Shown one piece after another: positions 3,235 through 52,745 of a stretch of DNA of 64,000 nt (position 1 is the stretch's first letter; every line of letters starts with the position of its first letter). The notes beneath the pieces are model-generated. The model worked only from the letters and a program-made list of their open reading frames with translations. It ran no database searches and was not told where the DNA came from. Source of the DNA: Phallusia mammillata (Eukaryota); assembly GCA_965637545.1 (NCBI GenBank), contig OZ281496.1, positions 29,078,001-29,142,000 of the forward strand, written 5' to 3'. A program made the translations under genes and the position numbers.

Positions 3235-3290
3235 GATATGCCATTTTTCGTGATGAAAGCATCTTGTATGGGACGTCGAAACGTCGATTT
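3235..3290 (+). repeat. Decayed hammerhead unit, family A'
   Basis: CGTGATGAAAGCATCTTGTATGGGACGTCGAAACGTCGATT versus intact 29778-29819; the core reads GUGAUGA. Confidence 0.65.
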
Positions 3291-20706: not shown

Positions 20707-23700
20707 ATGAGCAATCCGAATGTGTTGGAGAAAATGTCTTCGACGAGAAGCTCCAAAACCAAGAGAGAAAGCTGGAATAAATCATGGGACTTTGTACTTG
20801 CACTTCTCGGTGGTTCAATAGGACTTGGTAATGTGTGGAGATTTCCATATCTCTGCTTCAAGAATGGCGGGGGTAAGTGGAAAAATTTGCACACTGTATG
20901 GGTTGGTGTTTGTGCGATATAACTTGCTGTTTTTTTGTTTGTTTGTTTCGGGCCATAGTTTACCATGGAGCTTAAGCAACGTGCTTACAACAGCTAGCAT
21001 CATATGGCACATGTAAATAAGCTATTGCTGCCAGGCATAGTATCAACTTTAAAGAGCTCTTCTGGCAAATGTATTTTTATTCCGACGTTTCGACGTCCTA
21101 TACAGGTCGTCTTCATCAGGGTAAATAACACTGAATGCGTCTAGTACAGTGCACGATAAACAAAGGAAAAAAGGAATAAAACGCAAGCACGTCACAACGA
21201 AACGAAACTTTTTTCCTTTGTTTATCGTGCACTGTACTAGTCGCATTCAGTGTTATTTAACCTGATGAAGACGACCTGTATAGGACGTCGAAACTAGGGT
21301 TGAATTATCCGGATATCGGATAACCGGTTAACCGATTAACCGAAGGATTTTTTGTTATCCGATATCCGGATATTTTTGTGTCGGTTAACCGGATAACAAA
21401 AGAACAGTGCCGCGTCAGCGTTTTATGCATTTTAACATAATTTTAGAAAACACGCAGTTAATGTGCAGTGGTGGATGCAACGAACGACTTTATGTTTATC
21501 CTACATATTCCCTACCAATGTTCAAATTCACAAGAAAATTTACGTCACACTAATGAAACGGTAAATACATCTATTGTAAGGTGATTGGCTCGGAGGGATA
21601 AATTTTTAGATACGTAAAAAAATGTTCGTTTAGTAACAATGTTTGCGGCCCGGTGCATTGTGGGACATCTCCATACATTTTGATATGAATTTCCCACAAT
21701 GCACCGGGTAACTTGCAACGAAACATAGCGAACTTGAACGCAAGTAACTAAGTTGCCGCAAGTTAGCTATCTTGCAAGTTTTTTGTTTGTTTTCGAAACG
21801 GCGTCCCATAATGCTTAAGCAGTAAATGCGTAAATTTAATATATGCTGGACAATTATGAACAAAAAAACGAAATCGGCGCCACAATTGAATGATGTTGGA
21901 ATAGACTTATTATTATCCGGTTAAACGGATAGCTAAATTCAAAATATCCGTATATATCCGTTATCCGGATAGTGGAAATTATTGATATCCGAACCAACCC
22001 TAGTCGAAACGTCAGAATAAAAATATATTTGCCAGAAGAGCTCTATAAACTTGATATGGCACATATGTTTGCATGCTTGATAAGTAAGAGTGTAAGAATT
22101 GTTTTGTGAAATTTAGGTGCTTTTCTGTTCCCTTACCTTTTCTTCGTCATGGTGTTGGCGATTCCTATGGTGATGCTGGAGACTTCAATGGGACAAAGGG
22201 TGAGGCGGGGATTGGTACAGAGCTGGGAGATCGTTCCTGTGTTCAAAGGTATAACATCAATCTGATTAAATTGTTGTTGTTTGCGGCCGACATGTAACAT
22301 TTGAAGAATGGTTTTGCATAGGAAACAAACAGGAACAAAGGATTTTTATATCGATTTATATTTCGATTTCCACGAACTGATGATGCCACATCGGCGATAA
22401 GTTATATATTGCTTTATTTGAACCGACAGACTCTGTTTCACCAAGGATTTTGTCGTCCATTGGTTTTACTGTATTATAGTAAAAAGGCCAAACAGTGATC
22501 GTCAGTTTAAGTCATGCTGTTGATGGTTTTGATCTATTACTAAAGTTGTCATTTTGTTCTACACAAATCTATTAGCTTGTTTGTTATAAATTTAAAAGAA
22601 TTCCGAAATTCACAAAAAGCAACAACCTTTGACAACAAAATGACAACTTCTTTAGAAAAAATTAGGCGGTCCATCAAATTATCGAAACCGAATTGTCAAC
22701 GTTGCCAATCCTCAACACGCACAAGATGCCATAATAGAAGGAAAGAGAAACATACACTTTATATGAAGTGTATTTTGCCTTTTATACATTATTATTGAAA
22801 CTGAATCTGATTGCAATGAAAAAGATATTAGACTCACGCAGTTCAAACTGCAAAAAGGTTTGGGTAATAAATTGACGCAGCAACATTTCTCCCTATTTCA
22901 CAGGTCTGGCCGTCGCCCAAATAATGGTCAGCTTCTATTACAATGTTTGCTACGCGGTGATTATGGCGTGGTGCTTTAAGTATTTTCAAGTCAGCTTTAT
23001 GTCTCCCTTGCCCTGGTCGACTTGTGGAAACCCGTGGAACACAAACCGCTGCGTGATGGCCAAGAAGAACATTGAATCGTCGATTAATATTACAACATTC
23101 GAAAATTCATCTCATACCGATGCAACCTCACACGCGATAAACAGTTCCCACAACGCAACAACCACAATAGGAGTTACCTCATCAGCAACGGAGTATTGGT
23201 TGTAAGTAAAACCTATACCCTGAACAGTCGTAACCTAAGACAATTTAGAAATAGTCAAACATATTATGTATTTTTAAACGACATTTCGGATTTTCGGATC
23301 ATTACAACTTGAATGATTGTCCAAATTAAGGTGGTGACAAAAGGTTGATAAAACATTACAAGTGTGGTAATTCCACACATAAAACATTATAGTCCTTGTT
23401 GCAAAAGATACTTGTTAATTTTTTTTAGTTTAGTTGCAAGTTCAAATTTAGTTATGGACTGCACACACCGTAACTGCTCTATATACCCATACTGTTAAAG
23501 AAACCTGCGAAAGGCTTTTGATCCGTTCATCAGAAAAAAGTGTTAGCAAAACAATTTGGAGTGTAACAAATGTGGCCACAGCTTTAAGTGTGATTGTTTT
23601 AGGTCTTAAAATAATGTACATACTGACGAAAACAAAAAGTTACCTGATAAAGCTCGAGATTCAAATCAGTTTTGGAAGAAAGTATCAGGCAAAACAACAA

Positions 23701-26700
23701 ATTGAAGTAAAATAACCGAAGGGCTTTAATAGATTTTTGTATAGTGCTTGGTACATTTCCAAACAGCTAAGTGTGATTATTTTCAGTCGTGGAATATTGG
23801 ACGTGTCCCCAGCAATCGAGGTTTCTGGCAGTTTTCGTTCAAATCTCGTAATTTGCCTCATAGCGGTTTGGATCCTGGCTTATTTAGCCACGTTCAAGGG
23901 CATCAAGTGGACGGCTAAGGTGTTTCATTTCTCTTGCTTATGATTTTTCCCCTGTGGTGCCTCGACAATGTACAGATAAAACTTAATTGAAACAGCACAT
24001 GCCAAAATGTGTGTTTGCACCCGTAAGCCAATGGGTCTGAACCTTTCATAGATCGTGGACCCCTTTAAATAACCCTCGGTAGCCGTGACCCCTGCTCATC
24101 ACAAATTGCAGATGAAAAACTTACCAAACTACATAGTAGACGCTATACAATGTAAACTTTGTTCAAAAATAGGTCTTTTATGATCTTTACTGGTCATATT
24201 CCCACAGCTTAATGGTCATTTCCCACCTGGTTGGGAACCACTGACTTAGTATCATTTGGCGGATGTTTTTAGTGATATTTCACCCCTGGTCGCTCAGAAT
24301 ACAGGGCGTGGGCCCACTGGTGGGCCAAGGGCTCTGGATTAGGACATTAATATGAGTGTACCGTGATCGCTGGTCTGCAAAGACGCTTGTGGGCTGATTC
24401 CAGTTATGAATTTATGTGCATCTTAACTTAACATGTTTTGTTTCTATTAGATCGTATACGTAACAGCCACATTTCCTTTCTTACTGATTATCGTCATTTT
24501 GATTCGCGGGCTAACACTAGAGGGCGAATCACTCGGCTTAAGGTACTACGTCATTCCTGACATGACAAAGATTGCTAATCCGGAGGTAAGGTTGTTGTTT
24601 TCGTTTGTTAAGGCAAAAATATGAAACGTTTAATAGTTTTATCTAGTTTAATAGTTTTATAAAAAGTGTTTTTCAAAAAGTGACAAAATTTTGTGTAACG
24701 TGTTTTAGCAATTAGAGCGGCCCAATGGACGGAAAAAGCGACGAGCTTTAATAGTCAACGGTTTTGAAAAATGATCATGCCATCAACAGTAATATGGGGG
24801 GGGGGGGGGGGGGGGCTTCATCACCCGTTTATTTCATCACGAGGGGCTTCATCACCCGTTTATGACCACGGGGGACCTAATACAAAAACTAAGAACGCAA
24901 TTTTTAGCTTTAACTTATATTTCACATAACAGGTATGGGTTGCAGCAGCTACTCAGGTAATTTATTCTTATTCCGTCGGATCGGGAATCCTAACAACACT
25001 TGGAAGCTACAACAAATGCCACCATAATTTCTGGAGGTAAGTTCTTCTTCAAAACTACAGTGCAAGTCTTTTCAATTTTTATTTTACGTCTTGCTTAGGA
25101 GACTGACTTGATTAGGTCGTGGCGTAGTATGATTTATCATTTTAAATTCTTTTTGCATTAGTATTTAAAATAGACGTTGACAATGCAGTAACAGAGTATA
25201 TTGGTCTTAGTCAAAAAGCTAGCAATCTTTTCATCTAGGGAACAAACGCATTGATATTTGTGTTACAGAAAGAGAAGTTGTATGTCAGGCCGGGCTTTTC
25301 GCGCCTAGGTTTAATTAAAACGGCCTGACATTACTCTCATCATCACTTGGCCGCAATCGCACCAACTTTCAAGCCTAAAATGGGCCCTTCTACAACTCTG
25401 GCACATGAGCAAATGTAGTGCTTTATTCTTGCTGGTTTTTACCAGCGACTGTTTTTTTACTGTATATTTCAAGACACCAAATTGTTTTTGCAAACGTTTG
25501 CAATTACAGGGACGCAGCTATATTCTCCATATTTAACACTATGACAAGTTTTGTGAGTGGACTGGCGATCTTCTCCACTCTCGGGTTTATGGCAAACTAC
25601 CAGGTATTTGAGCAGCTTACTATAAAGACACTTAGTAGAAACAGTAATGTCAACAATAAATAAACCAACCACTGTTTGGTTATTTCATCGAACTTACAAG
25701 TTTAAAAGAGAAACAATCAAGCCAGCATATTTGAATGGAACATGACGTAAAAGTCCCGAGCTAAAGATGGACCAAAATTCGACCATCTGAGCTTATTCAA
25801 CACCTGACCTTATAATCTCTTTTTGTTTTTACCTGTACGTGGTTTCATGTTGTTTTCATGCTGTTTTTTCTGCTTTTACTGGTTTTACGTGCTGCTTGGT
25901 TTTTACAATCATTTCATTTGAAAGTTGCCGTCGAAACGCCATGTTCTTTACAAATGTATTGGCTTGTTGGTTTCTTGTTAAAATTGTCAAAACCGTGAAT
26001 TGTGTAAATTACAAGTTAAGATTTTTTTTCTTTTTCTTTCTGGACACACTTTTCATTCGTTTTTACCTAAATTACTTTTTCAATTTAACGCTACAGAACA
26101 CAACAGTCGAGAAAGTTGCAAGCTCCGGACCAGGGCTTGCGTTTATCGCCTACCCAGAAGCATTGTCACTCTTACCACTACCCCAACCGTGGAGCACCCT
26201 GTTCTTTCTCATGATTATTTTCATCGGCTTTGACTCAATGGTAAGGACAGGGACAAAACAGTACAAACACTTGCCCACAATCGTACCAGAGCAGTAAAAA
26301 TGTATGAAATCAAAATGTCACACTGGACACAACGTTGAAAATGATCCTGGCCGAAAACAACACTGTCAGAACACAACAGAGTTGTAAGTGGGGCCGACGT
26401 CCGGACTTGATGTAACAAGTTAGAGGCCCGAAATTATCAGAAATTTCGACACGATTGAGCCTAACTGTGTTAAGTAAGGTTGGAATCGTTAGATTCAAGT
26501 TTAATCAAACACGATACAAAAATCCCGGCCTCACTTACAACTCTGGTAAAGAGTAAGTGTTCTTATAAAAAATGTTCAAGCCAAAATCTAAAAAGCTTAA
26601 ATTATAACCCTACAATACACTCAAATTTGTAGAGCTCTTCTGGCAAATGTAATTTGATTCCGACGTTTCGACGTCCTATACAGGTCGTCTTCATCAGGGA

Positions 26701-28731
26701 AACAATACACTATTGTGAAACAATATGTTCAAGATCTCTCCTCTATATTTATTTGTTTTTAAAGCGACATTTGTGGACATTGCCATGCAACGCACTGATT
26801 TGACCATTTTTACAGTTTATTGCCCAAGAGACCATCATGGCAATTTTATTTGACAACATCCTAGTCTTGCGCAAGAGAAAAGAACTCTACCATGCTATTG
26901 TGTGCTTCTTAATGGGATGTATCGGACTTACAATGGTAACGCAGGTAAGACGCCAGCCAACGGTTATCGTCAGCAAACTTCACAAGAGCAAATTTGCCTC
27001 GGTAGCAGAAAAGAGTCTGAATGAATATTTGCTTACTGATTCAAATCTTTCAAAAACATCACGTAACGCATCCTTATGAATTTAAGATATATAAATATTT
27101 CGCCTATGCGGCATCATTGGTAGTATAAGCAAGCACAAAGATATATATCTTGAATCTATACGGATGAAAGACTTGATGTTAAATAAATTTGAATCAATAA
27201 GCATAAGGTTCATTGCAATCTTTGGTCACAAAGCAATGAGCTGAGAGGCTCTAGTTAAAAGTTTGAAGTATACAGTATCGATACTTCAAGGAACTTCACT
27301 TTATAACAGTCATATACAATTTTGCAAGATCAATCTCTTAGTTACAAAAATTCTGCATGATCATTAGCTGGGTCAAACTTTTATTCATTATTTTAAACAG
27401 GGTGGAGTTTATGTGTTCGAGATCTTTAACAACTACGGTACTTCAGGCTGGTGTATGTTCCTTATTACTGCAACAGAATGTGTGGCAATTGATTGGGTGT
27501 TCGGCTTCGAACGTTACTGGGTGGAAATAAAGAACATGATCGGGGAACAAAGAGGGAAATATTGGCTACTGGTATCTTGGAAATTTGTGGCACCTATCAT
27601 ATGCATTGTAAGTACCTGATGCTAAAGTTTTACTTGCAGTTACAGCGACTTTGTTGTACTTGCTAATCCGTACTTGGCCTACGCGTAATTGGTTGCGTCA
27701 CCAGCCTGGCGTCATACAAGTGTATGGTCATGTTATAGGATCAAATTCATAAAACTCTTCCGGCAATTGTACTTTTATACCGACGTTTCGACTTCCTGTA
27801 AAGATTACTTCATCAGGGCAAACAACACTGAGTGTGCGCATATGTACTTAATATTTTGCCTGACAGCAACAACTTGTATATGTTTTGAGTGTTTTGTAAT
27901 CGTGGACCTAGTTTTCAAAAGTGGCTTGTCTTGTTATGGACGTTGTGGTTTTCGGACAAGTTTTATACTTGAAGTTTTACATAATAAACATGTGAAGAAA
28001 CAAAATTTGGTATCAAAAGTGCCTGATACGTCGCTTTTATCAAACTCCAGCTATTTAGGTTTAACGTTTTATTTGCTTTTTAGATTATAGCGGGTTACTA
28101 CGTGACAATGCATAAACCACTACGTTATCGAGATTACGTATATCCACCATGGGCACAAGCAATCGCCCATCTCATGAGCTTCAGTTCAGTTATAATGATC
28201 CCGACATATGCGATCTACAGCACCTACACCACGTGGAAGAACGGAGGAAGCTTCCGAAAGGTAAAACGAAGTTAGGCAACCTTGACCATGCAAACTTAAT
28301 GAATAAGTTCACGAAAAAACACGAATTTCGACAAGAAACGATTGATAAAACGCTGCGACGAATCTATTCACTATATACAAGTTATCTGAAATTTGTTTCT
28401 ATAAATCACGTGGTACCGAATCTAGCCGGTCTCCCTAGCATTCTTAAATAACAAGGCATGGACTAGAAAAAACTAATCACCGGTCTGCTTGTACGCTTTC
28501 GGGCTGATCGTAACTGTTTCTATAAGAAATAAGACCCAGACTTGGAACAACAAAATATAAAACGACGGCATATAGCCACATTGTAAACAAACCATTAAAA
28601 ACACACAGTACTATATATAACACGCAAAGTTTCCATTGACCAGTGCAGACAAAACTAATACGATTTTTATGTTCTAGTTGCTTGGACAACAACCTAACGA
28701 AATTGTGAAGGAATCTAGAAGGGTGGTTTAG
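20707..28731 (+). CDS. SLC6 paralog 3, 12 exons, 590 aa
   Basis: Exons 20707-20872, 22117-22248, 22904-23201, 23787-23919, 24451-24585, 24933-25036, 25510-25603, 26097-26240, 26816-26944, 27401-27607, 28084-28260, 28678-28731. Exons 2-11 have the same sizes as paralog 2; total 1773 nt; no stops. Confidence 0.9.
21077..21128 (-). ncRNA. Minimal type I hammerhead ribozyme, family A (intact)
   Basis: Minus strand UUAUUUACC-CUGAUGA-A-GACGACCU guau AGGACGUC-GAAAC-GUC/GGAAUAA. Predicted cleavage between 21084 and 21083; stem III is the loopless palindrome ACGU. Confidence 0.85.
21295..22002. mobile_element. hAT-type MITE (TAGGGTTG) inserted in a hammerhead core
   Basis: TIRs TAGGGTTG / CAACCCTA; TSD GTCGAAAC at 21287-21294 and 22003-22010; TTATCCGGATA/TTAACCG subterminal repeats. 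Confidence 0.9.
22320..22560 (+). mobile_element. Diverged solo terminal repeat of the Penelope family found at 53897-55833, with decayed hammerhead
   Basis: GAACTGATGATGCCACATCGGCGATAAG..CCAAGGATTT..GGTTTTACTGTATT..AAACAGTGATCGTCAGTTTAAG.CATGCTGTTGATGGTTTTGATCTATTACTAAAGTT matches the reverse complement of about 53897-54120; GAAA has become GAUA. Confidence 0.85.
26622..26701 (-). mobile_element. 80-bp ribozyme-only family A insertion
   Basis: 10-bp TSD ACAATACACT at 26612-26621 and 26702-26711 around the family A core and a short tail. Confidence 0.75.
26654..26705 (-). ncRNA. Minimal type I hammerhead ribozyme, family A (intact)
   Basis: Minus strand UUGUUUCC-CUGAUGA-A-GACGACCU guau AGGACGUC-GAAAC-GUC/GGAAUCAA. 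Predicted cleavage between 26662 and 26661. Confidence 0.85.
27745..27830 (-). repeat. Family A hammerhead unit with intact core nucleotides but decayed stem II
   Basis: Minus strand CCCUGAUGAAGUAAUCUUUACAGGAAGUCGAAACGUCGG; not seen in the paralogous intron 10 of copy 2. Confidence 0.7.
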
Positions 28732-29681
28732 CACATATTGCCCTTGAATATACACTATAACCTATTTTCAAACATTAATATATATGTCCTACCGTTATTT
28801 TATATTGGGTCCCTTATCATGCACTGTATTTTATAATCTTGGTTGTTTCTGCAAGCAGAAACGCATGGGTCCTCACACAAGCAAAGTTGTTTGATATTGT
28901 AACGTCAAACACAGTAATTGGTACTGTACATCAATTATTATGCTATATGGAATACTACCTATTTAAATTCATTCCATTCACATAATATTAAAGGTTTATC
29001 CATTTTATGGTATATCTGAGAAGAGTTAAATAGCGAGAAAATAGGCTAAAACACAACAATTAGCTCCTATTAATGGCAAATTGCACAGGATTGTAGGAGG
29101 CTAACAATCGACACCTGTACATGGTATACTCTACAACAGGGGTGGGCAACCTGCGGCCCTTTTTTAAAGGTTGTGCGGCCGGCAGAGACGCTTGGATTTC
29201 AAATGTACTGGCAAACGAGATTCGAACTATTATATATTTTTGAGCTGATTAATACGCCCGATGCTATTTTTCTGCGACCTGGCATTATGAAGCTAGAATC
29301 AAATACGAATTATGCCTGTAGTTAAGCATATTTGGCACGCAACAAAGCAAAATCACTTTGTGTTATACCAGGGGTCGCCAACCCGCGGCTCCGGAGCCGC
29401 ATGCGGCTCTTTGATCCCTCTGATGCGGCTCAGTTTTTGAATTTACCAAATGTTGTACATTTGAATAAAAATTATGTGACGATTATTCCGAACACAAAAG
29501 TCGAACACGAAAATTCCCATCTCTATACCATCAAACGTGAAGTCTGAAAGAGGCAAACTGGCGGCGCGCAGGTTAATACGCAATATGAGACAATACTGTT
29601 TTTGTTTACAGTGTGTGTGCGCGCGTAACAATAGCTGTTTGTTAATTGTTACGTAACAAACGCGTTAACAAAGGAATACAA

Positions 29682-29854
29682 GTTTGCAGCCGCGCGATCT
29701 TGTTATCGCTGTTTTACATGTGTGTGTTTTGCATTTTGTCGCTTTAAAAGAAATTGTCTTGCAAGTTATGTCATTATCCTGATGAAGGCGTCTTGTATAG
29801 GACGTCGAAACGTCGATTGTTTACAATAAAACTGCTGGATGAGCAATACTTGGT
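29682..29854 (+). mobile_element. 173-bp family A' hammerhead-bearing insertion
   Basis: 13-bp TSD CAAAGGAATACAA at 29669-29681 and 29855-29867. Confidence 0.75.
29771..29822 (+). ncRNA. Minimal type I hammerhead ribozyme, family A' (intact)
   Basis: AUUAUC-CUGAUGA(29779-29785)-A-GGCGUCUU guau AGGACGUC (8 paired positions)-GAAAC-GUC(29812-29814)/GAUUGU. Confidence 0.85.
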
Positions 29855-30963
29855 CAAAGGAATACAAATCTGCAAAAAAAGAATATGCAACGCTACGTAA
29901 AGTTGTTTTCTCTGCTGACGAGACTAGTATACCAGTGTGTCTAATATGCAATGAAACACTAGCTAACAACAAAAAGTCGAATGTCATACGACTAAAAACG
30001 TTTTGCATTTTATTTTAAATTTTAAAACGACTTTGTGGCTCCCAGTGTTTTTTACTACGTGAAACTGGTCCGAGTGGCTCTTTGAGTAGTAAAGGTTGGC
30101 GACCCCTGTGTTATACATATGCAGGTGCGGCCCGCGATCCAATTTTGACATTTGTAATTGGCCCCACAGAATAACAAAGGTTGCCCGCCCCTGCTCTACA
30201 AGCTGGCCAAATTTCATTCAATTCAGACATTGTTTGAAAACTTGACCCTTTTTAGGGGGCTAGAGGTGTAAATATTGGGGCCACAGGGTTAAATACAACC
30301 ATTAACACTATAAATGATAAATTCTACAAACTGTCCAAACGTCATTTAATTTCAACACCGTTTAAAAAACTCAGACATTTTAGGGGTTTAGTGGGGTAAC
30401 TGATGGGGTTCAACACCCAAAAGTATAATATATAAAACTACAATGACCCAATCAATAGATATGTACAATTTTATCCAAATCGGAAAACGTAAAATTCTGG
30501 GGACCCATAATACTTCAGCGGAATATAAAATCTTTTGAAACTTTTTCAACAATTTTTCTGCACAGTGAATAGGTAATTGTAAACGCCATCAAAAGACAAA
30601 ACCATGGCACATATGAGCGAAGTGTTACCCATATTATTTTAATCAGGGTTGCCACATCGTCTTAATTTCTAAGATTTGTCCTTATTTTGAAGGGCAACGC
30701 GTCTTAGAAAAATATAGTGTCCCTATTTCCAGGAAATGTGCATTTTTGACTTACGTCTTATTTTGTCTTATTTTCGACAATTACAAGTCAAATTCCTGCC
30801 ACAAGTGAAAGCAAACCTATAAACCTGAGCTGTCGTGAGATGCACGAAGTATTTTCTATAAACAAGGAGTTGCTGGAACAGATTTCATGACCAAAATATT
30901 GCAAATTATATGTCATGGCTCGTATAAATGCAAAGATTTATTCAAAAACGTTTGTTTCAGCTG

Positions 30964-31460: not shown

Positions 31461-31469
31461 TCAGAAATT

Positions 31470-34400: not shown

Positions 34401-35901
34401 AAGAGACAACATGGACATCAACTATGACACTGGAAAACTTGCTGGGTTATTCTACAACAGCGAACCCGTTCTTGAGACGCAATACAACTATAATGAATAC
34501 AACGACAAGACGCAGCTAATCCAGTTGGCTGTTGAACGGGTCAAACCAACTAATTCAGGTTTGTCCAGTCCATATTTGAGTAGAAACTTAAATTACTGCA
34601 AAGTTCATTTGGGTTTTAGTCAGAAATGCAAACTTTACAAAACTAAATCAACCCTTTTAAGTAGTAATATTAAACGCGTTAATATCCTGCAACAATTAAC
34701 ATTGTCTCGAATACTAGACAGTCAAACGCCACACCAAAATACCTACATTATTTTACAATATTTTAATACCTACAATTTAAAAAAATCTTAATTACCCATG
34801 TACTTTAAAAACGCAGTCAAAAACATATCAATAGCGAAATAAAACAACTCTTATTAAACAAGTTCTGAATCAAATTCTGAATTACCTTAAACTTGCTCTG
34901 TTGCGACATCAAGAGGATGCAATCGTGAACACCGGACGGGCGATGAAGTACGCCATCAATAACATGTACCTGGCAGAGATGGGGGCAAGAGATTCAAGAG
35001 TTCCAAAGATTATGGTGATCATCACCGATTCAAACTCAGATGACAATGTTAAAGAAGCAAGCGATGCAGCAATTCAGGCTGGAATTACGGTTAGTGTTGC
35101 TTTCTGTATTAAAAAGGGGTTAAACAATTCGAGATCATCAAAAGATAGACCTTCACAGTGCTCTAATAATGCAATATCACAAAGCATATATGTGAAGGCT
35201 ACTTGTAATAACGCATTTTAAAGAATGCTAACATTTTATTACATTCATGATTGCAGCGGTGACGTGGTTTTAAACCATCGTTTTGGAACATTGGTTTAGC
35301 TAAGCACAAAGTAATGGAAAAATTACTTCCTATAATTTTGTGTGATAAGACAAACGTAAAACTGAGGTATAGTGTTCTAGTAATGCAATATCAACATAAA
35401 TATTGTTAAAATTTGCCAAATCCTGTCCGTACAACAAACCCCGCCATATGCGGAAAGTGTAAAAAAGTTTAAGATGTGCGGAGATGATCCTGCAAATTGA
35501 CACGGTATTTGACTCCACACTTTATAACATATTTATCACAGTTTCTGAACAATAAAGTGTTGAGTATGGTTTATTTATTATAAACAATCGAAGTTTCGAC
35601 GTCCTATACAAGACGCAATAATCAGGATAAAACTGCTGGATGAGCAATACTTGCTTATACATTATGACTGGCAGCAGTAGCCTATTTAACAAAGTATTGT
35701 TCTTTACAGCCCTACATTTTTGCCATCGAACATCCCGACTGGCCATTGAACAGAACACAAATGATAGAAGTTGCTGGAACTGCAGACAGAACCTACTTTC
35801 TTGCTGGAGAGGACGCGAATATGATGAAATTTGTTGATGATTTGACAGCTTCATTCTGCGAAAATCCATGTGACCACGTGCTTCATGAACACGAGAAATA
35901 A
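31470..35901 (+). CDS. Secreted Cys-rich (Ly6/three-finger-like) + sushi/CCP + VWA protein, paralog A, 9 exons, 397 aa
   Basis: Exons 31470-31524, 31750-31835, 31983-32075, 32430-32568, 32846-33040, 33581-33683, 34404-34558, 34914-35089, 35710-35901 (1194 nt, phases consistent). Signal peptide MRQLFIALLLAMCVGYSYG; ..VCTCCCDKDNCN; CCP CSDENKQGSTCEFRC..W..PKPCC; VWA NTGRAM..GARDSRVPKIMVIITD. Confidence 0.88.
35575..35695. repeat. Decayed family A' unit (inverted ribozyme half + tail)
   Basis: GTTTCGACGTCCTATACAAGACGC (minus arm) abutting AAAACTGCTGGATGAGCAATACTTG..TATG.CTGGCAGCA.TAGC.TAT (plus tail). Confidence 0.7.
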
Positions 35902-37019
35902 ATCTAAAACGAAATATGCATTTTTATTTAGAAATATTAAGTAAACGCTAAAAAGTTTTTAATTAATCAACTAAATTCCCAAAGTTGTACTTTGTCGTGT
36001 ATGCATTATGTAATCTTTAGCGGGTGGTTTTACGTAATAAAAGCATGGAAACATTAAAGTTTACTGGTGAATCCCACATTTGACATTAGTCTAGGAAAAG
36101 GGAACGTCAATGCAAAATGTAAGTGGAAAAGGTTTCGTGGAAAAAAGGTTATCAATAACGTAACATAGATAGAGCAAAAACTGCTGACTAAATGAAAAAA
36201 ACAATAACATGAAGTAGCGTAGAAACAATGATGAGTATAGAAGGATTACCAGGGATTTTATGATAGATACAAAAAATTATTGTCATTATTCTAGGTTTGA
36301 AAAAGACAATTTATTCAATTCTAGACTAACAAAGAGATAAATTATCTTTGTTGCCGTAGAAGAGCGTCATAATAAAATTAATTAATTGGAAAAATGTTTT
36401 AACACTTGTCTGTTTATACAGTATCCAGAAAATGGTGACTTTTATCGGGACAAAAGGCATGGCAATTTGCGTATAACCCGATACGTACGTACGTATGTAT
36501 TTTTGAGGCCATAATAATTGCTAATAACTATTAGGAACATGTACAAAAACTGGCTGTACATATTTTCAATGCAAATACATTTTGTTGTAAAATATCAATT
36601 ATTCAAAACATGTGTTGAAGAAAGGCTAATGAGAGAAATGAATTAAATTGCAACGAATCAAAACTACAGGTTTAACAAATGGACAATTTCTTGGTGATTA
36701 CTCGTAATGCAAAAGTTGTCTGCATTTCTGTCTGTATTAATGTTTCTCAGACTTTAAATATTTGTTTTTTATGGTCATTCGCATTATCCTTGAGCACTAG
36801 CGGTTCAAGCCTAACACGTTGCTTCAACCTCAATATACAACCCAAGAAACCAAAGGTGATGTTAGAAGCAACAGCAAATTTACTCCTGCCAAAAAAATGT
36901 TCACAAAAACACGATGAATTCACCTAGCTTCCCCTAGCTTAGTGTCTTTAAGAAGCCAAGATAGTTACGTCACAAACAAGACAAACACAATGATATGATT
37001 GCCCAGAGCGGTTGTTTTT

Positions 37020-37225
37020 ATGTAACTTGTAATGAAATACAGAAGCGTTAATAAACACAGGATAAATCACAGTACGCCAGGCCCATTGAAGGCGCCATAC
37101 CGAATCAGCCGGTCACCAAGCATTCACCACCATATGGCAAGGCGTAGGCTAAAAAAATCTAGCTTGCGAACCCACGACAGGAGTCTTTCCGGGACTCGCG
37201 CTCTACCAACTGAGCTACGCAGGCT
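37020..37225 (-). mobile_element. tRNA-derived SINE
   Basis: Minus strand GCCTGCG-TA-GCTC AGTTGGTA GAGC-G-C-GAGTC CCGGAAA GACTC-..GGTTCGCAAG. A box, D arm and anticodon arm are perfect; B box is degenerate; there is no T-stem or acceptor pairing. The 3' boundary is approximate. Confidence 0.6.
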
Positions 37226-38832
37226 CAGTGGGGAATCCGCCGAAAGTCGAATCACAAGCACCGTTACCTGCCTCGTATGCTGCACATGTCAGCTTCATAG
37301 TAGGGGATCGCCAGATTTATATATGAGTGTGTCGTGATCGCTGGTCTGCATAGACACTTCAGGGCTGATCCCAGTTATGAATTTATGTTCATCTTAATAA
37401 ACACTGGAGACTTATGCATATTCCATGTCAGTTTAGACCAGGGGTGCACAACCTTTTCGCTACAACAGCCGCATCGTATATCCTTAATACACCAACAGTC
37501 GACAATTACCTGATTGTTTTTGTTTTTAAAATACTATGATGTAAAGAAATTGGTTTATATCATATATACACCATCCACTTGCTCCTGAAAAGGCCAGATT
37601 AAATGTATTGTGACAATTGTGGTGACTATTTTTTGCATTGTTTGTACACAATAGATGTACAACAAGTCTGGCGGGTATGGCTGGTAATACTTGTTCCAGT
37701 CCCTTAAAATCAGTTTATAGCAGTTTGAAAATCAAATTATTTAACAAACGAGATAAATTTACGTCCAGGGCGCCAGTACACATGTTTTAATATACATGAT
37801 CACAGCCGCAAAAACTCGTCTCTGCAGCCACATGTGGCTGTACGGTTGCAGATTGTGTATTACTGTTTCGCAAAAAAGTAAATAAACGATTAACATATTT
37901 GAGTTTATAATCCTAAGCTAAAATAGTTTGCAGGAAAAGCAATGTTGATACCTGTACAGCAAAACTAAGTGAGACGAAATGAAGTCAATCATTACTTTTA
38001 AGACACTAAAGAACAATAATAGAAATAAGGACGGCATGGAAATCCTGCCGAAACAATGCGTAACGTAGAACGTCGAGCACTTTGTGGTACTGTCAAAATC
38101 GCTCCACCAAAGTTTTAAAGCCGCGGGTTTACGCAGTCAATGATAGAAATACTATGACATACTATTTCTACATGCAAAGCGTACAACGGGTTTAAGAACC
38201 ACCGGTTTTAGTTGTTTGTGATGTATATTAATACATCCAATGCTATATTTCTAATTGCAACGGTTATAGCAAACAGCATCAAGTACGTTAAAACCCGGAC
38301 GTGCATTTTAAATCATGGTAATTGGAAGCACTGGACTGACATTATATACATAAACCATAAAGGTAACAAAATAAGCACGTACACAAATATGTTACACATA
38401 ATACTATTCAGGTGGATCAAAATGAATCTTTATTCAACTGACAGGTTACAATGTTTAAAGGTTGCCGTATAATCTTAATTTACAGCACTGAAAGCTATCT
38501 AGCGCGCTAGGTAGGTGGTTAAATCGTCCCAGTGACACAATAAACTAAAACAGCGTTGACCTATACTAAATAACTCAGCTACTGCCTGTCTAACTTCACG
38601 GGGATTAAACTTCCCTTGTCATTTTTACGACCATAGCCTGCCAGCAATTTGACAGGCATCTGACACTAATGTAGTTAGAATGACATGATGGCTTAGTGTT
38701 AGAAACTTTTTATCCATATATAAAGAGACAATTTCTATAGTTAAGTAACACTGGTTGAGTGATCATTAAGAGCAAGTCAGCCCAGGTATCAAAGTTGTTT
38801 CAACACAGAGTGTTTCAAATTTTTGATACAAA

Positions 38833-41800
38833 ATGAGACTGTCGTTCGTCGCGTTGGTTCTTGCAATATGTTTCAGCTATTCCTACGGTAAGTTAACAAG
38901 GTAAAAGTGTTTATTTAGCAAGATACGGCCTTCGTAGTGTGTATAACCAGCGAAAACATGCACACACTTGTTTTATTTAGGTATACGTTATTACAACTTT
39001 CAACATAACTTGGAAACTATTACTGCTGGATTATCTTCGTGTTTTTTTCTGCGTAAACGTATGAATTTTGTGTTTCAGGCCTATCTTGCTGGAAATGCAC
39101 AAACGCAGCTAGTTTGGCTGAATGCGAATCTAAAGGGCAGATGGTTCAATGCAACAATCAACAGGTAAGTACAAGTAAGAAGTACATCTTATGTGTATAG
39201 TAACAAACCAATGCGGTTCAATCCAAAAGCGAAAATGTATCTCTTAACATATATTCGCATTGATTATGTATCATTTGCAATGCAACACACAATGCACGCT
39301 TTATATATTTGATTATTATTTTAACAGTCGTGTCAAAGCATTTTTCGAACACACAACGGCCGAACTTCGATCACCAAACGCTGCAAACAGACGGCTGCTT
39401 GCTTGAACAACATGAAACAGGTAGGAAATAAGCTATTGCTGCCAGGCATAATGTATGACCAAGTATTGCTCATCCAGTAGTTTATTATAAACAACCGACG
39501 TTTCGACGTCCTATACAAGACGCCTTGCAAGACAAGACATGCCATTTATCCTGATGAAGGCGTCTTGTACAACGTCGATTGTTTATAATAAAACTGCTGG
39601 ATGAGCAATACTTGGTTATTAAACAGGCATTTACCTCAAAAGCATTTTGAGTTATTGTAAAAAAAATAAGACTGAGTGAAACACCTCGACACGTGGCTGA
39701 ACAAATCCATAAACTACACAAAATTTTAGCTGCTTATCCTTTTTAAGTTTGTTTGAAAACTGAACTGCCATTAGCGTTTTTATACCCTATAATGAAGTCG
39801 CACGTTACACTAACGTTTGTAGAATATAAGATCATCTGGGAAATCTTTCCAGTGTAATGGAGAACAAACCAACTCAGTATGCACATGCTGCTGCAAAGAG
39901 GACAATTGCAACAAAGGATCAATAGACTGCATCAAAGTACAACAAGCTACAGTGGCGGCACCAAAACCAACCAAGCCGGGTAAGCGTTAAATGATTTATG
40001 CTGTAAAACTGTAAAAAGATGGGTAGCACGACATCAAGTTCAAAATCGCTGTCTGGTGACAACCTATAAGCGAATAAAATCAGAACAAGTTGATTAGTTT
40101 TTTTATTTAACAAATAAAAACGTTTTTCCATGCACTTGCTATTTTTGTTCTCTATATTTACGTAACTGTAAGGGATACCTTATAGGTGCTGACTTTTTTG
40201 GATATGCAGCACATATACCTAAAAGCATCAACCCGAACTATATTGTTATGTAGCGATTAAGGCAACGACGTGCCCGAAGCAAGGCGCGCTACCTCACGGC
40301 GAAGCGAGTTGCTCGGATGAAAACAAACAAGGTTCAACTTGCGAGTTCCGTTGCACTTCACCGAACTATACCATCTACCCGTCTGGTGCGGATAAAAACC
40401 AGTGTGGAGCGGATGGACAGTGGAGTCAACCAAAACCCTGTTGCGCCAGTGAGTGGCTCCTTTTTAGATTTCAGTTTTTGTCTTCGTGTCATTTTGTTTT
40501 TTACTCGGTATAAAAACGGCAAAGGAAAGCAACAGTAAAATACAACGCGTTCTAAATTCACGCTACTAACATGATGCAGTAATACATCTTGAATTGAAAT
40601 ATTGTTACTTTTAGGACCTTGCCCTCCATTTCTCCTATTCGACGCCGCCATTCTCTACCACGCTTCGGACAGGCGAAGTTTGCCAATCATCAAAAATATC
40701 CGCAACAACATCGTTAGGTAGGTGCCTTACCAAAGCTAGCGACTTCTTAACTTTACAGCGTGAACCCTAACGTGTATTGTCTGTATGATAACGAATTTCT
40801 CAAATCGCTGCGTTAAAAGACGTAGTGTATCTTTGATCAAAAATACATTGTTTTCACGGTCGCTTACAAAATCTGGTTATTTTTAAACTATGTCAGCATA
40901 CAAAACACTAAAAACTAAAATAAAACACAATCATTTTCAAAGGGATAACATGGACATTAACTATGACACTGGTAAACTTGCTGGAATATATTACAACAAC
41001 AAACCTGTAGTTGAGACTCGATACAACTACAGTGAGTACAACGACAACAAAACGCAACTCCTGCAGTTGATTGGTGAAAGAATCAAACCGACCAAGACAG
41101 GTTTGTACACATTCAAATAGTAACAGTTATTAGCATGTAGATTTCTTTTTAACGCGCAACTGTGAATACGTGAATCCAATCTTTGTATGACCTTACGTTA
41201 GCTCCTATGTGAAACCAAGAAAGTCTGTGTTCGTAACATTTTTTCGGCTGTATACCATTTGAACATTTAACCACAAATGATGATCATAATTAATCCTGAA
41301 GCAACGATCACGGCACTAAGTCATGGTACACTATTAGGCATATTAAAGGCACACTGTCATGCCTATTGAAGGCTTAATGCAGAATTGAGCCTGCCGTGCA
41401 TGCCTATGTACCAGTTAAGTAGAGCATCTGCCCAAAATAGGCTCCTGTCGCAAGTTTAAATCCTTACGCAGGGTAGATTTTGCTAGTGTATGGAAAATTA
41501 TGGGAATGATAGGTTCTTGAACAGGTCTAAGTAAGCAAAACCACTATGTTAAAAAACAATAAAATCACCATTAACCTGATCTATTGTGTTCTGAAGTGGG
41601 GGGGTTCGTGAACACAGGCAGAGCGATGTGGTATGCTGTGAACTACTTGTACCGACCCGAAATGGGAGCGAGAGATTCCAGAGTTCCAAAGATTCTTGTC
41701 GTCATCACCGACTCAAACTCAACCGACAACGTTCAAGCACCAAGCAACGCTGCTATTCGCGACGGAATTACGGTACGTCCTGCAATAAAAATAGGTTGTT

Positions 41801-42343
41801 CAAGTTTTGTGTGTGAGTACAAGGAGCATTCTAATAATGCTGTAGCTTCGGATAATTGCACTATTTCACTGACAAACATTTTCTCCTCTTTTCCTTTTGA
41901 CTAGAGTTTAATTGTACATTTACATTTTTATTGCGTAATTGAACTCACACATAAATGGTATATAATGCTTATGTTACGGTCACAATAAAAAAATATTACG
42001 GTCACGATAAAAAATATTATGGTTACGATAAAAAAGTCTGCCATGTCAGGAAAATGTAAGATATCGTTAAGATACCGATAACTCTTGTTGCATTTGGTTT
42101 TAGTTTTTAAGCAATATTTATAAGCGTCCAAAACAATTTTGTTTACAACAGCCGTACATCTTTGCAATCGAACACCCCGACCGGCCATTGAACAGAAAAC
42201 AAATGGAACAAGTTGCTGGAACTCCAGACAGAACTTACTTTCTTGCCGGCGAAAACGCGAATATGATGAAATTTATTGATGATCTGAAAGCTTCATTCTG
42301 CGAAAATCCATGCGACCACGTGCTTCATGAACACGAGAAATAA
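38833..42343 (+). CDS. Secreted Cys-rich (Ly6-like) + sushi + VWA protein, paralog B, 9 exons, 404 aa
   Basis: Exons 38833-38887, 39079-39164, 39328-39420, 39823-39979, 40254-40448, 40615-40717, 40943-41100, 41597-41772, 42152-42343 (1215 nt). Colinear with paralog A; identical C-terminus SFCENPCDHVLHEHEK*. Confidence 0.88.
39421..39620. mobile_element. Family A' inverted double-ribozyme insertion at the exon 3 splice donor of paralog B (both cores broken)
   Basis: Minus arm 39421-39526 ends before the CUGAUGA complement. Plus arm has CUGAUGA at 39551-39557 with a ~10-nt deletion through GAAA. AAACAG is duplicated at 39415-39420 and 39621-39626. Confidence 0.8.
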
Positions 42344-42953
42344 ACCTGAAACGAAATATGCATTTTTATATTAAGTAAATGAGCTTTTTAAAAACTGATA
42401 AATAAACCGACCGTGAAAAGATTGTTGCCTCGTCGAAAATGTAATTATACTTGCATTTGAATTTTTAGTAAATGTGTACATTATGATGATTTGCTGTGAT
42501 CATAAAAAATAAACACAAACTTTTAAGAAATGAACACCAATAACTCATAAAGGTAGCCACGTATTTCAACATTATTAACTTAAGTCTAATTTAGCTTAAA
42601 AGTCTAATGAAAAGCAGGTGAGGAAAAAAGGTCAACAAAAGTTTGCCTAACCAATACATATCTTCTGGAAATCACACATGAGTCAAAAACGTTTTTGAAA
42701 ATTTGAGGTTTTTAAAGTTTGGCGCAGACACATCTAGCAACCATATTTGTTTTATAAACATGACAGGATAGTTACACGTTTGCGTGTACGTCCCATTGTC
42801 TTTTAACATCTATCACACGTCAGTCGCCGCAGGGATTAGATGCGACACGTCATTAGACGTTAGTATTTATACAGCTATAAATCGACTTGTTAACGTCTGT
42901 CGGTTGCACATATTTCTTTGTGATTTGTAGTCAACAGTAAATTGCTTTGAAGA

Positions 42954-45900
42954 ATGAAGTCGACGCTCGTATTCTTTGCTTTGATTGGAATGGCAATCGG
43001 TAAGTTGTTTTGCTAACTTTAAAAGTTTTTGATAGTGCGGTTTAGTGTTAATCAAAACGTTTGCCACTTTTAAAACTACCATTTTTGGAGGATTTAATTT
43101 GCTTTTTTAAGACCAAAAATCGTACAATTCAATTTGAGTAAGGTTTATGTAAATTTGGCAGGCGAAAACCTCCCGCATTTTCCACATGACTTCGCTATTC
43201 TCTACCATTCTTCAAATGACACCAACGCGATGATGATGGCCACTGCTGCCACAATAATTCACAGGTAAGGTGTTTTGTAAAGTGCGGTATGTTTGTTTTT
43301 ATGTTCCAGTGCAAAACCTTAACTAATAGCATGACCTAAACTCTGTCAAGCTTTTTACTTCAGAATCAATACATTTTTTGTTAAATTACTTTTTGTCTCG
43401 GTGTTTTCGTTGCGTTGTGGCGTGCTTGCGCTCCACTCTTTTTTCATTTGTTCATCGTGCACTGTGCTAGTCGCATTCAGTGTTATTTACCCTGATGAAG
43501 ACGACGTGTATAGCAGGGGTGTCAAACTCGTGGGGTTCAGGGGCCACATTGCAGTTTGTAAATTATGCCAAGGGCCGCATTTGAGTTTTAATGTAGATCA
43601 CTTAAACAACCTCTTCGCCGCATTGTAGATCCTTATTTCACCAATAGCCGCCAATTACCTGCTGGTCTTTGTTTCAAAATTCCAGATGTAAAGAAATTGA
43701 TTTATATCATATCATATACCATCTATTGACGCCCCCAATGCCCAGATTAATTTCCAACTTGATGCATAGTTAGTCTTAACTGTTTATGATGTCATAATCT
43801 AAATAGTGACGCTTGTGGTAACTGTTTTAGCATTATTTGTACGCAATAGTCGTTCCTATTACTATCGTTTCTATCTACGACACATGGCTTTTTTGTTTAT
43901 AAATTTTTCTGTTTCTGTAAATATGTATTTAAATGATAGCTTTCACTTTGAAAAGTAAGAAAAAGTTGTTATGATTAGATATAAATCTGACAAAACACTA
44001 CAATTGTTGTTGAGTGTTCGTTGGCCGCATTGGAGGGCTTCGTGGGCCAAATGCGGCCCGCGGGCCGCGAGTTTGACACCCCTGCTGTGTAGGACGTCGA
44101 AACGTCGGAATAAAATTACATTTGCCGGAAGAGCTCTACAAACTTGATATTATGCCTGGCAGAAATAGCTTATATACTTTTTTCTCGTTGTCATGGAATT
44201 TATAATTAAATTACCGAAAAATCTATTCGGGCCGTTATCTTCTATTTGGGCCGTTATCTTCACGATTAAACTTATAAACAGATCCGTATATGGTGTTCCG
44301 ACAATTCCATTTAACAAATAATCGCATCACTATTGAGTTACTTTACAGTCAATATTTTCGCTTCTAATCCAAAAAATTTTCAGCATTTACATTTTGTTTG
44401 CCCTCATGCAAAAATACATTGAATAGCCGGAGTTAACTATTCTTGAATATCTCTAAGGACGCTCAAACAAACACCAGACGACGGCGCCAACTTCGCCGAA
44501 ATCTATTTCAACGATTTTCCCGTAGAAGAATCGAGAATCAACTTTGCCGAATCCGCAAATGCAGAGGACGAACTGGAATTATTCATGCAGCGAATTTGGC
44601 CGGAAATGAACGCTACTGGTACTGGTCAGTGACTAATAAGCCTCTTTAGTAATATGCGCGATTGTGCAACGCTTGTTAAGAAAAAGGGTTAATGCGAAAA
44701 AAATCTCAACACGCTTTACTGTTTAAACGTTTCGGAGAATACTCTTGCTATCATAAGCAACTAACTATAGACATCGTTTCAGATTCGCACAAAATCAAAC
44801 TTTAGGAATCTACACAAAGTGCGTTTCCATCTAAAAAACAAAGCCCTTAATAGATGTTTTCATATTTCGAAAAGGTAACCAGACTGCTGTTGCCAGTAAA
44901 GCGATAATATTCGCAATGCAACACATGCTGACGGAGGAAGCCGGCGCCAGAAAGACCAAGGGTGTGGAAGAAACAATTTTAATCGTCACCGACAGCAACT
45001 TAGACAACGATTCTATTATTGCGGCAAATGACGCCAGAGACGCTGACATTTCGGTGCGGGATTTTATGACAAATATTACTAATCGGATTTTATATGATAT
45101 CGGGTTTTATATTATATGGTGGTTCTCAACCGGATTCGGGCAACAGAGTCCAATTAAATAAGTATAGTGGATCAGTCCATCGGTAATAGGATTAAAAACG
45201 TATCTACAACAAGCATGTTGGCTTAAAATATATTCCTCATAGTTTAATTTAATGAGAGACAGATAACAACAAATGGCCAATAATTTGGATAAGCGTTTCG
45301 TACTGATATTTGGTACTTAATATAATATTTATTGAATTACATACCATTAGCCCCTATCCAATTTAACTCAAAATACAATTAACGGTCTGTGGACCACCCG
45401 AAAAGTCATCATGGACAACTAGCGGTTCATGGATCTGTAGTTGAGAACTACTGATATAAGAGAAAGCAGTCTAGAACCAATTATTTGTTCGTTATTAACT
45501 TACATGGACATTAAAGCTACAGCATGTTTTCAAAAAATGTGCGCGCGTTTACGCTTGCACGCACATTGTGCAAAAAGCGCGCGTCTGGTCTAAAAAGCGC
45601 GCCGATTTTCGCAATACGTGTTTTTCTAAAGCTGTAGTGTTATTGAACCTACTAAAAAGCAGTTGATAAAAGGCTGTTTCTTTGATGGTTTTACATGTTC
45701 TTGGCAAAAATAGGACTCGCTTACTAAGTCGGTACAACATATTTTTAAGACAAAGTTCTAAATATTCGCAAATTAACATTTCAGGTATACGTCATCGTTA
45801 TCAAGTCAAGAGATACGGATTTGAACAAAACACGTTTAGTGGAAGTAGCCGGCAACGAAACCAACGTTCTCCACGTGTCTGAAGAAGCAGGGAACATTTC

Positions 45901-52609: not shown

Positions 52610-52674
52610 GCGTATTGGACAGCAACATAATAAATCTGGTATAATCCCGCAAAGCGTGAGTGAGACGCTACATT

Positions 52675-52687: not shown

Positions 52688-52745
52688 CTGTTTTACGTTT
52701 GGGTTGATTGTGCATCTTCCGGAAGGAAATCCTGACCTCGTGGGA

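What the first reader, a model, noticed from the sequence alone, without database searches (positions are those of the whole stretch)
21013..44173. Non-coding mobile units built around a hammerhead ribozyme (family A/A'), spread through the window
Seen: at least 12 intact or broken cores (3250, 10614, 10761, 21113, 21262, 26691, 27810, 29779, 35600, 39500, 39551, 43492) of CUGAUGA-A-stem II-GAAAC-GUC with a shared tail ..TATGCCTGGCAGCAATAGCTTAT. Three family A copies share the same 5' boundary (TCGTT.CGTTGTG.CGTGCTTGCG at about 10727-, 21205- and 43407+), defining a ~190-nt unit. Several have 10-13 bp TSDs (21002/22054, 26612/26702, 29669/29855), like the 12-bp TSD of the bona fide Penelope element. 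None encodes protein. Established: Penelope-like elements carry minimal type I hammerheads with a palindromic stem III thought to work as dimers; an extra nucleotide between A9 and G10.1 occurs in the chrysanthemum chlorotic mottle viroid hammerhead; ORF-less ribozyme retroelements (retrozymes) exist. Inference: these are ribozyme-defined SINE/retrozyme-like units or solo pLTRs mobilised in trans by a Penelope RT/GIY-YIG; no autonomous parent of this family is in the window.
Basis: partly seen in the sequence, partly recalled or inferred. Interest (0 to 1): 0.85.

Follow-up and report, generated by a model that had tools for sequence, protein, structure and literature searches.

The report
Truncated Penelope retrotransposon ends with hammerheads
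The hammerhead-bearing repeats are real, but they are broken-off 3' ends of two ordinary Penelope-like retrotransposon families whose full-length, protein-coding parents sit elsewhere in this genome; they are not a new kind of non-coding mobile ribozyme unit.

Summary

The proposed discrete ~190-nt unit does not hold. In most genomic copies of family A, homology runs upstream of the supposed 5' boundary, through a TAG stop codon, into an ORF ending in a GIY-YIG nuclease domain with a reverse-transcriptase match upstream. Family A' behaves the same way, with a parent whose protein is about 63% identical to the family-A one.

In an unselected sample, the 5' ends are scattered. The 3' ends fall at two fixed sites, about 27 nt apart: with or without the tail. 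About half the copies carry an inverted 5' arm, and 23 of 24 head-to-head pairs have the tail on exactly one arm.

The genome holds about 1,180 family-A 3' ends but only 5 junctions between the terminal repeat (pLTR) and the ORF.

Every feature is already published for Penelope-like elements: the minimal hammerhead in the terminal repeat with an extra base between positions 9 and 10.1, a G10.1-C11.1 pair, a palindromic ACGU stem III, heavy 5' truncation, inverted arms and a one-sided tail.

Interest is low.

The parts
21013..21215 (-). Family A direct copy. It is the 3' UTR of the Penelope-like element (PLE), running from just after the ORF stop region to the tail. It has an intact minimal hammerhead at 21084-21119 and the tail at 21017-21039. 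An 11-bp target-site duplication lies at 21002-21012.
21208..22053 (+). Inverted 5' arm of the same insertion. It covers unit positions about 43-175 and has no tail. A 708-bp MITE at 21295-22002 splits its hammerhead. The second copy of the target-site duplication lies at 22054-22064.
26622..26701 (-). Short solo family A copy of 80 nt. It runs from 3 nt before CUGAUGA to the proximal (no-tail) 3' end. A 10-bp target-site duplication flanks it at 26612-26621 and 26702-26711.
27735..27834 (-). Diverged relative of family A, about 80% identical. The core boxes are intact but stem II no longer pairs, and it has no tail.
29682..29854 (+). Family A' copy, 99% identical to the genomic copies. It is 5'-truncated 9 nt upstream of the CCGCGCG motif, within the 3' UTR. 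It ends at the proximal (no-tail) site. A 13-bp target-site duplication flanks it at 29669-29681 and 29855-29867.
35589..35688 (.). Family A' composite. An inverted arm carrying a mutated hammerhead (35593-35625, minus strand) is joined to the last ~55 nt of a direct copy that has the tail (35663-35685, plus strand).
39426..39610 (.). Family A' head-to-head insertion. The direct arm on the minus strand carries the tail (39428-39450) and has lost CUGAUGA by deletion. The inverted arm on the plus strand (from 39544) has a broken core and no tail.
43401..44175 (+). Family A direct copy, 5'-truncated at the start of the UTR and carrying the tail (44151-44173). A 571-bp MITE at 43514-44084 splits the hammerhead. 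A 12-13 bp target-site duplication lies at 43388-43400 and 44176-44187.
10521..10825 (.). Old family A insertion, about 73% identical. The direct copy on the minus strand spans 10521-10759 and starts just after the ORF stop region. The inverted arm on the plus strand spans 10760 to about 10825. Both hammerheads are mutated.
3243..3286 (+). Isolated degenerate family A-like core in which C3 is replaced by G.

Best explanation
Families A and A' are the 3' untranslated ends (the pLTR part plus the tail) of two autonomous Penelope-like retrotransposon (PLE) families in this genome. Each parent encodes one ORF of about 790-815 aa. It gives a reverse-transcriptase match in the middle and ends in a GIY-YIG nuclease domain. 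About 225 nt of UTR follow the ORF, carrying a minimal type I hammerhead.

The tail is the first ~27 nt of the next unit in a tandem. It holds an ATG in frame with the ORF.

New copies are made by target-primed reverse transcription. This part is inferred from the published in vitro work on an Anolis PLE:
- Both target strands are nicked 10-13 bp apart and both are extended, which gives the target-site duplication and the head-to-head inverted arm.
- Reverse transcription starts at one of two fixed internal sites, which gives the 'tail' or 'no tail' 3' end.
- Synthesis usually aborts early, which gives scattered 5' ends.

The window copies are therefore dead-on-arrival 3' fragments. The hammerhead rides along passively in them. 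As a monomer it has no stem III, so it could cut only when paired with a second sense copy.
For: Shown:
- A 681-aa open frame in L033 hits Pfam RVT_1 and GIY-YIG. Its nearest Atlas clusters carry HTH_animal, DUF8422, RVT_1 and GIY-YIG.
- 73 genomic matches to that protein include open frames of about 800 aa.
- Five junctions exist between the terminal repeat and the ORF. Two independent copies read MPGSNSL(Y/F)IELKGLYGPDV... from the tail's ATG.
- A family A' unit lies 45 nt downstream of an ORF whose protein is 63% identical. A' copies also run into coding sequence.
- In the unselected sample of the first 20 pattern hits on one chromosome, 5' ends fall at reference positions <=456, <=468, 720, 720, 806, 821, 824, 839, 851, 871, 877, 878, 893, 899, 899, 905 and 908. 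The 3' ends fall only at about 972-978 or about 996-1004.
- Neighbouring cores are head-to-head in 12 cases, tail-to-tail in 0 and tandem in 1, p=0.0005.
- Exactly one arm carries the tail in 23 of 24 real head-to-head pairs.

Published matches:
- The minimal hammerhead in PLE terminal repeats, with a base between positions 9 and 10.1, a G10.1-C11.1 pair and a palindromic 15.2-16.2 (PMC4209133).
- 5' truncation, an inverted 5' copy, and a 30-40 bp tail at one end (PMC8557442).
- Cleavage and extension of both strands, two adjacent internal start sites that define the tail, and a hammerhead that is dispensable for insertion in vitro (PMC11167929).
Against: - The Pfam scores for RVT_1 (24.6 bits) and GIY-YIG (18.6 bits) lie below the curated cut-offs.
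- There is no sequence match to any solved structure.
- No Rfam hammerhead model matches.
- No copy that I could read has an ORF shown to be open end to end without an N run or a stop, so current autonomy is inferred.
- The mechanism is transferred from one lizard element studied in vitro. That study saw no strand difference in start-site choice, whereas here the tail is strictly one-sided.
- No RNA evidence was obtainable.
Confidence: 0.88

Rival explanations
1. One reading: a discrete, non-coding, ribozyme-defined mobile unit of about 190 nt, like a SINE or a retrozyme. It would have its own 5' end and be copied in trans by a Penelope enzyme.
For: Three window copies end within about 25 nt of each other near TTTCGTTGCGTTGTG. 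The top 40 genomic matches to the 216-nt query all start at query position 9. Copy number is high and no window copy has an ORF.
Against: - The start at position 9 comes from the query itself, which diverges there at an inversion junction. The flanks upstream of it are conserved and coding.
- 5' ends in the unselected sample are scattered.
- Tandem neighbours are rare, 1 of 13.
- A recurring 80-nt form (L063, L065, L066) has identical flanks, so it is one insertion duplicated along with its surroundings.
Confidence: 0.04
2. Many of the short copies are not aborted copies of full-length RNA. They would be made in trans from short transcripts that start in a terminal repeat and run across the repeat-ORF junction of the few full-length or tandem copies. 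That is non-autonomous behaviour without a discrete element.
For: Only 5 repeat-ORF junctions exist against about 1,180 3' ends. In the Anolis element the RNA needed for insertion is the junction plus the first 172 nt of the ORF (PMC11167929). Non-autonomous PLE derivatives are reported (PMC8557442; bioRxiv 10.64898/2026.07.22.740005).
Against: Copies of every length, up to more than 2 kb of ORF, form a continuum, as expected from simple 5' truncation. Nothing here separates cis from trans copying.
Confidence: 0.08

Closest known systems
Canonical endonuclease-bearing Penelope-like elements (Penelope/Poseidon-type), as described by Arkhipova and colleagues and by Craig et al. 2021 (PMC8557442)
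   Same: [quoted passage not shown]
- Partial tandems that form pLTRs.
- Heavy 5' truncation.
- An adjacent inverted 5'-truncated copy.
- A short tail at one end only.
- A hammerhead in the terminal repeat.
- Target-site duplications of 10-13 bp.
   Different: Nothing structural. The tail here is about 27 nt, slightly under the quoted 30-40 bp. The clade within PLEs was not determined.
Minimal PLE hammerheads (min-HHR) of Cervera and de la Pena 2014 (PMC4209133)
   Same: - CUGAUGA and GAAA boxes.
- One extra base between A9 and G10.1.
- A G10.1-C11.1 pair.
- A long helix II (7 positions).
- No helix III hairpin, but a palindromic ACGU that can pair between two copies.
- Large numbers of copies per genome.
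   Different: That paper does not mention tunicates (0 occurrences of 'Ciona' or 'tunicate'). Cleavage was not tested here.
Poseidon element of Anolis carolinensis, PAc (Frangieh et al. 2024, PMC11167929)
   Same: - Two alternative 3' ends that bracket the tail.
- The tail lies at the junction of terminal repeat and ORF.
- The AUG inside CUGAUGA is in frame with the ORF in family A.
- Insertions that imply extension of both target strands.
   Different: Here the two 3' ends lie about 4 nt before and about 25 nt after the tail's ATG, against 111-118 nt into the ORF in PAc. The tail is strictly on one arm (23 of 24 pairs), whereas the in vitro work saw no strand difference. In family A' the CUGAUGA AUG runs into a stop codon.
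Animal non-LTR retrozymes (Cervera and de la Pena 2020; Li et al. 2026 preprint, 10.64898/2026.07.22.740005)
   Same: Short ORF-less sequences with type I hammerheads, related to PLE terminal repeats.
   Different: Retrozymes are tandem arrays of unit-length repeats that give circular RNA. These copies are dispersed, solo or head-to-head, have scattered 5' ends, and are continuous with an ORF in longer copies.

Membership tests
Penelope-like element (EN+) | One ORF with a reverse transcriptase followed by a C-terminal GIY-YIG nuclease | tested here: met
   Pfam RVT_1 matches residues 263-408 and GIY-YIG matches residues 577-616 of the 681-aa frame in L033. Both scores are under the curated cut-offs. 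The nearest Atlas clusters carry HTH_animal, DUF8422, RVT_1 and GIY-YIG. The GIY-YIG motif can be read directly in 14 copies.
Penelope-like element (EN+) | Partial tandem copies that form pLTRs upstream of the ORF | tested here: met
   Upstream pLTR lengths are 110 nt in L050, 76 nt in L048 and 39 nt in L080. In L078 and L079 the upstream copy runs back into the preceding ORF for more than 360 nt.
Penelope-like element (EN+) | Frequent 5' truncation, with an adjacent inverted 5'-truncated copy | tested here: met
   5' ends are scattered. Neighbouring cores are head-to-head 12 times, tail-to-tail 0 times and tandem once.
Penelope-like element (EN+) | A short tail extension at only one end of the insertion | tested here: met
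   23 of 24 real head-to-head pairs have the tail on exactly one arm, and none has two. The tail is about 27 nt.
Penelope-like element (EN+) | Clade assignment (Penelope/Poseidon, Neptune or Nematis) | not tested
   No phylogeny or linker-motif analysis was done.
Minimal PLE hammerhead (min-HHR) | Core boxes CUGAUGA and GAAA, a base between positions 9 and 10.1, a G10.1-C11.1 pair, and a palindromic 15.2-16.2 | tested here: met
   Read directly from the matches and compared with the feature list in PMC4209133. Stem II variants GACGACC, GGCGACC and GGCGUCU all face an unchanged GGACGUC and keep or improve pairing.
Minimal PLE hammerhead (min-HHR) | Self-cleavage at GUC, as a dimer | not testable with these tools
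   Only assembled contigs of uncertain kind were available, so no read starts or ends could be seen. The upstream ends of the five full-length copies are not anchored at the cut site.
Rfam hammerhead families | A match to a curated covariance model | tested here: not met
   No hit at gathering score or at E<=10. This is expected for a motif without a helix III hairpin.
Animal non-LTR retrozyme | Tandem arrays of ORF-less unit-length repeats, each with a hammerhead | tested here: not met
   Only 1 of 13 close neighbour pairs is in tandem. Longer copies are continuous with the ORF.
SINE-like non-autonomous retroelement | A fixed 5' end shared by independent copies | tested here: not met
   5' ends are scattered in the unselected sample. 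The apparent common start came from the query itself.

The most novel reading that the evidence does not exclude
The two reverse-transcription start sites may be used in a coordinated, strand-specific way in vivo. In 23 of 24 head-to-head insertions exactly one arm carries the ~27-nt tail and never both. The in vitro study of the Anolis element saw no strand difference. If the rule is real, one protomer of a dimeric enzyme would start at the distal site and the other at the proximal site. That would explain the long-noted one-sided tail. The tail also holds the ORF's start codon and is conserved between two families whose proteins are only about 60% identical.
Probability: 0.3. Interest if true: 0.4.

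Novelty: new member of a known kind. Interest (0 to 1): 0.17.

Why it matters
It removes a candidate new class of ribozyme-defined mobile RNA: these are ordinary scars of Penelope-like elements. There are two small positive results:
- Genomic data from a second, distant chordate fit the two-start-site explanation of the PLE tail.
- The tail is strikingly one-sided in inverted insertions. This is a concrete number that an in vitro system could be asked to reproduce.

Tried and rejected
- Rfam, at gathering score and at E<=10, gave no hammerhead.
- Minimum-free-energy folds of monomer and dimer recover stem II and the outer part of stem I. They pair CUGAUG with CGUCGG instead of forming the catalytic core, so they say nothing about activity.
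- The search for RNA runs found only Logan contigs whose kind is a guess. Laying them showed that the element is present but gave no molecule starts or ends. I drew no conclusion on expression or cleavage. The 3'-biased word depth is not usable, by the tool's own warning.
- I asked whether full-length copies begin at the GUC cut site, which would indicate cleavage in vivo. The five junction copies have upstream repeats of 110, 76, 39, >360 and >360 nt, so they do not.
- A possible discrete 80-nt mini-unit (three identical-length copies in the sample plus 26622-26701) was rejected. The three share their flanks and are one insertion duplicated with its surroundings.
The only match has 2 mismatches, lies at 43127-43142, and has no hammerhead next to it.
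- The sequence search against solved structures found nothing.
I ran it one place shorter instead.
The unselected sample was therefore limited to 20 short stretches.
Full report
**Observation**

The repeated hammerhead-like cores are real.
- An exact search for CTGATGA, 8-30 bases, then GAAACGTC finds four sites in the window and none in 100 shuffles.
They are intact, mutated or split.
- The 23-nt tail is found four times, against zero expected.
- The target-site duplications lie at exactly the coordinates given: 21002/22054, 26612/26702 and 29669/29855. A fourth lies at 43388/44176.
- Rfam reports no hammerhead, at gathering score or at E<=10. The call therefore rests on the motif.
- Two copies are interrupted by small DNA transposons, at 21295-22002 and 43514-44084, each with 8-bp duplications. 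That is why their cores look broken.

**The unit boundary fails**

The window is part of a 240-Mb assembly.
- A search of that genome with the 216-nt copy gave 2,360 first-look candidates. The 40 that were scored are 92-96% identical.
- Nearly all start at query position 9, which at first looks like a discrete unit.
- The 40 nt upstream of that point are conserved among the genomic copies. Homology continues for hundreds of bases.
- The upstream sequence reads through a TAG stop into coding sequence with the GIY-YIG signature (G-V-V-Y-x-I-P-C ... Y-I-G-E-T-G-R) in at least 14 loci.
- The common start was therefore an artefact of the query, because the window copy diverges there at the junction with its inverted arm.
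- In the window, the three 'shared' boundaries are three different things. One is a true truncation beside a target-site duplication (43401). One is an inversion junction (21208-21215). The third is a copy that continues about 33 nt further, to the junction with its inverted arm.

**The parent element**

- The 681-aa frame matches Pfam RVT_1 and GIY-YIG in that order. Both scores are below the curated cut-offs.
- Its nearest Atlas clusters are animal proteins of 730-800 aa carrying HTH_animal, DUF8422, RVT_1 and GIY-YIG.
- A protein search of the genome gives 73 matches, some with open frames of about 800 aa, plus a set of families about 60% identical.
- In locus L050 the element reads, 5' to 3':
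  - an inverted arm;
  - a 110-nt upstream copy of the UTR end with the hammerhead and the tail;
  - the ORF;
  - the full 225-nt UTR with the hammerhead and the tail.
- The tail carries an ATG in frame with the ORF. Two independent loci read M-P-G-S-N-S-L-(Y/F)-I-E-L-K-G-L-Y-G-P-D-V from it.
- Only five such repeat-ORF junctions exist in the genome. In two of them the upstream copy runs back into a preceding ORF, which is a true tandem.
- I did not verify any ORF as open from end to end. The longest frames contain an assembly N run or one stop codon.

**Family A'**

- The 29690-29860 copy has genomic relatives at 98-99% identity.
- Some of them extend upstream into coding sequence that ends like the family A ORF.
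- One lies 45 nt downstream of an ORF whose protein is 63% identical to the family A one.
- A' copies occur with or without the same tail. One head-to-head pair has a 12-bp target-site duplication and the tail on one arm only.

**Unselected sample**

To avoid the query bias I took the first 20 places on one chromosome that match a 24-nt piece of the hammerhead's 3' half. I aligned each to the last 1,004 nt of a full-length copy.
- Three places share their flanks, and one repeats a locus already seen. This leaves 17 insertion events (18 independent places, since two are the two arms of one insertion).
- Their 5' ends lie at reference positions <=456, <=468, 720, 720, 806, 821, 824, 839, 851, 871, 877, 878, 893, 899, 899, 905 and 908.
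- Their 3' ends fall in only two places: about 972-978 (no tail) or about 996-1004 (tail).
- About half carry an inverted arm.
- Among 88 exact cores on that chromosome, neighbours within 5 kb are head-to-head 12 times, tail-to-tail never and tandem once.
- Across all loci held, 23 of 24 real head-to-head pairs have the tail on exactly one arm, and none has it on both.

**Comparison with the literature**

- Cervera and de la Pena 2014 describe minimal hammerheads in the terminal repeats of Penelope-like elements. [quoted passage not shown] The window's motif has every one of these: CUGAUGA-A-GACGACC-UGUAUA-GGACGUC-GAAAC-GUC.
- The extra base is therefore the rule for this class, not a peculiarity shared with a viroid.
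- Craig et al. 2021 describe heavy 5' truncation, partial tandems, an adjacent inverted 5'-truncated copy, and a 30-40 bp tail often at one end only.
- Frangieh et al. 2024 worked with purified Anolis PLE protein. They report that:
  - both target strands are cut and extended;
  - reverse transcription starts at two adjacent internal sites whose spacing is the tail;
  - the tail region sits at the junction of terminal repeat and ORF;
  - the hammerhead is not needed for insertion.
[quoted passage not shown] Those are tandem arrays, which these copies are not.

**Mechanism**

Shown here: the copies are 3' fragments of elements whose ORF carries a reverse-transcriptase match and a GIY-YIG domain. 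They have two fixed 3' ends, scattered 5' ends, inverted arms and target-site duplications.

Inferred from the Anolis work:
- Staggered nicks on both strands.
- Priming on both strands at one of the two internal start sites.
- Early abortion of synthesis.

If the Anolis requirement for ORF sequence downstream of the start site holds here, the short copies lack the enzyme's binding site and cannot be copied again.

The hammerhead's own role stays open. In a solo or head-to-head fragment there is no second sense copy to form stem III. The upstream ends of the five full-length copies are not anchored at the cut site. No usable RNA reads were available.

**Verdict**

The sequence features are confirmed and the family is large and young. 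I checked it independently here.

What remains of modest interest:
- The strict one-sidedness of the tail.
- The tail contains the ORF's start codon.
- The tail is conserved between two families whose proteins are only about 60% identical.

Noticed in passing
all loci held; window 21013-22053 and 39426-39610: In 23 of 24 real head-to-head PLE insertions exactly one arm carries the ~27-nt tail, and none carries two. Published in vitro work on an Anolis element reported no strand difference in start-site choice.
   Followed up: partly
L050:4085-4205(-), L048, L078, L079: The tail contains an ATG in frame with the PLE ORF (MPGSNSL...). In family A the AUG inside the hammerhead's CUGAUGA box is also in frame, 75 nt upstream. 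In family A' that upstream frame hits a stop codon (A' read directly).
   Followed up: partly
window 21295-22002: A 708-bp non-coding DNA transposon (MITE) with terminal inverted repeats TAGGGTTG/CAACCCTA and an 8-bp duplication GTCGAAAC. It is inserted inside a hammerhead. The 8-bp duplication is of the hAT type.
   Followed up: partly
window 43514-44084; also 51952-52611 and an end near 1141: A second MITE family with terminal repeat CAGGGGTGTCAAACTC and an 8-bp duplication. One copy splits the hammerhead of the 43401 copy.
   Followed up: partly
window 53980-55835: A different, distantly related PLE. It is a 5'-truncated direct copy with a 325-aa ORF fragment carrying GIY-YIG (54340-55317, minus strand). 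It also has a 413-bp inverted arm that is 99% identical, its own hammerhead type (CTGATGATGCCACATAGGCGAAAT) and its own tail. It sits inside a Gypsy-type LTR retrotransposon (gag, RT, RNase H and integrase ORFs at 52656-58587).
   Followed up: partly
window 1390, 7738 (+); 7355, 15548, 24761, 44721 (-); 22377 (+): Further minimal-hammerhead families (for example CTGATGATGGCATGAG.ATTTGCCGAAACGTT). All have one extra base after A9, so they are probably the ends of other PLE families.
   Followed up: no
window 47612-49270 (+): An uninterrupted 552-aa ORF with both MIP-T3 (TRAF3IP1) domains. A single-exon copy of a ciliary gene amid retroelements could be a retrocopy.
   Followed up: no
window 49502-49633: A ~130-nt near-perfect hairpin that gives sub-threshold matches to two plant microRNA families on both strands. 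It is most likely a small inverted-repeat transposon.
   Followed up: no
L063/L065/L066 and L022/L064 (chromosome C1): Identical PLE fragments with identical flanks recur at distant places. Some copies were therefore multiplied by duplication of the surrounding DNA, which inflates copy counts.
   Followed up: partly
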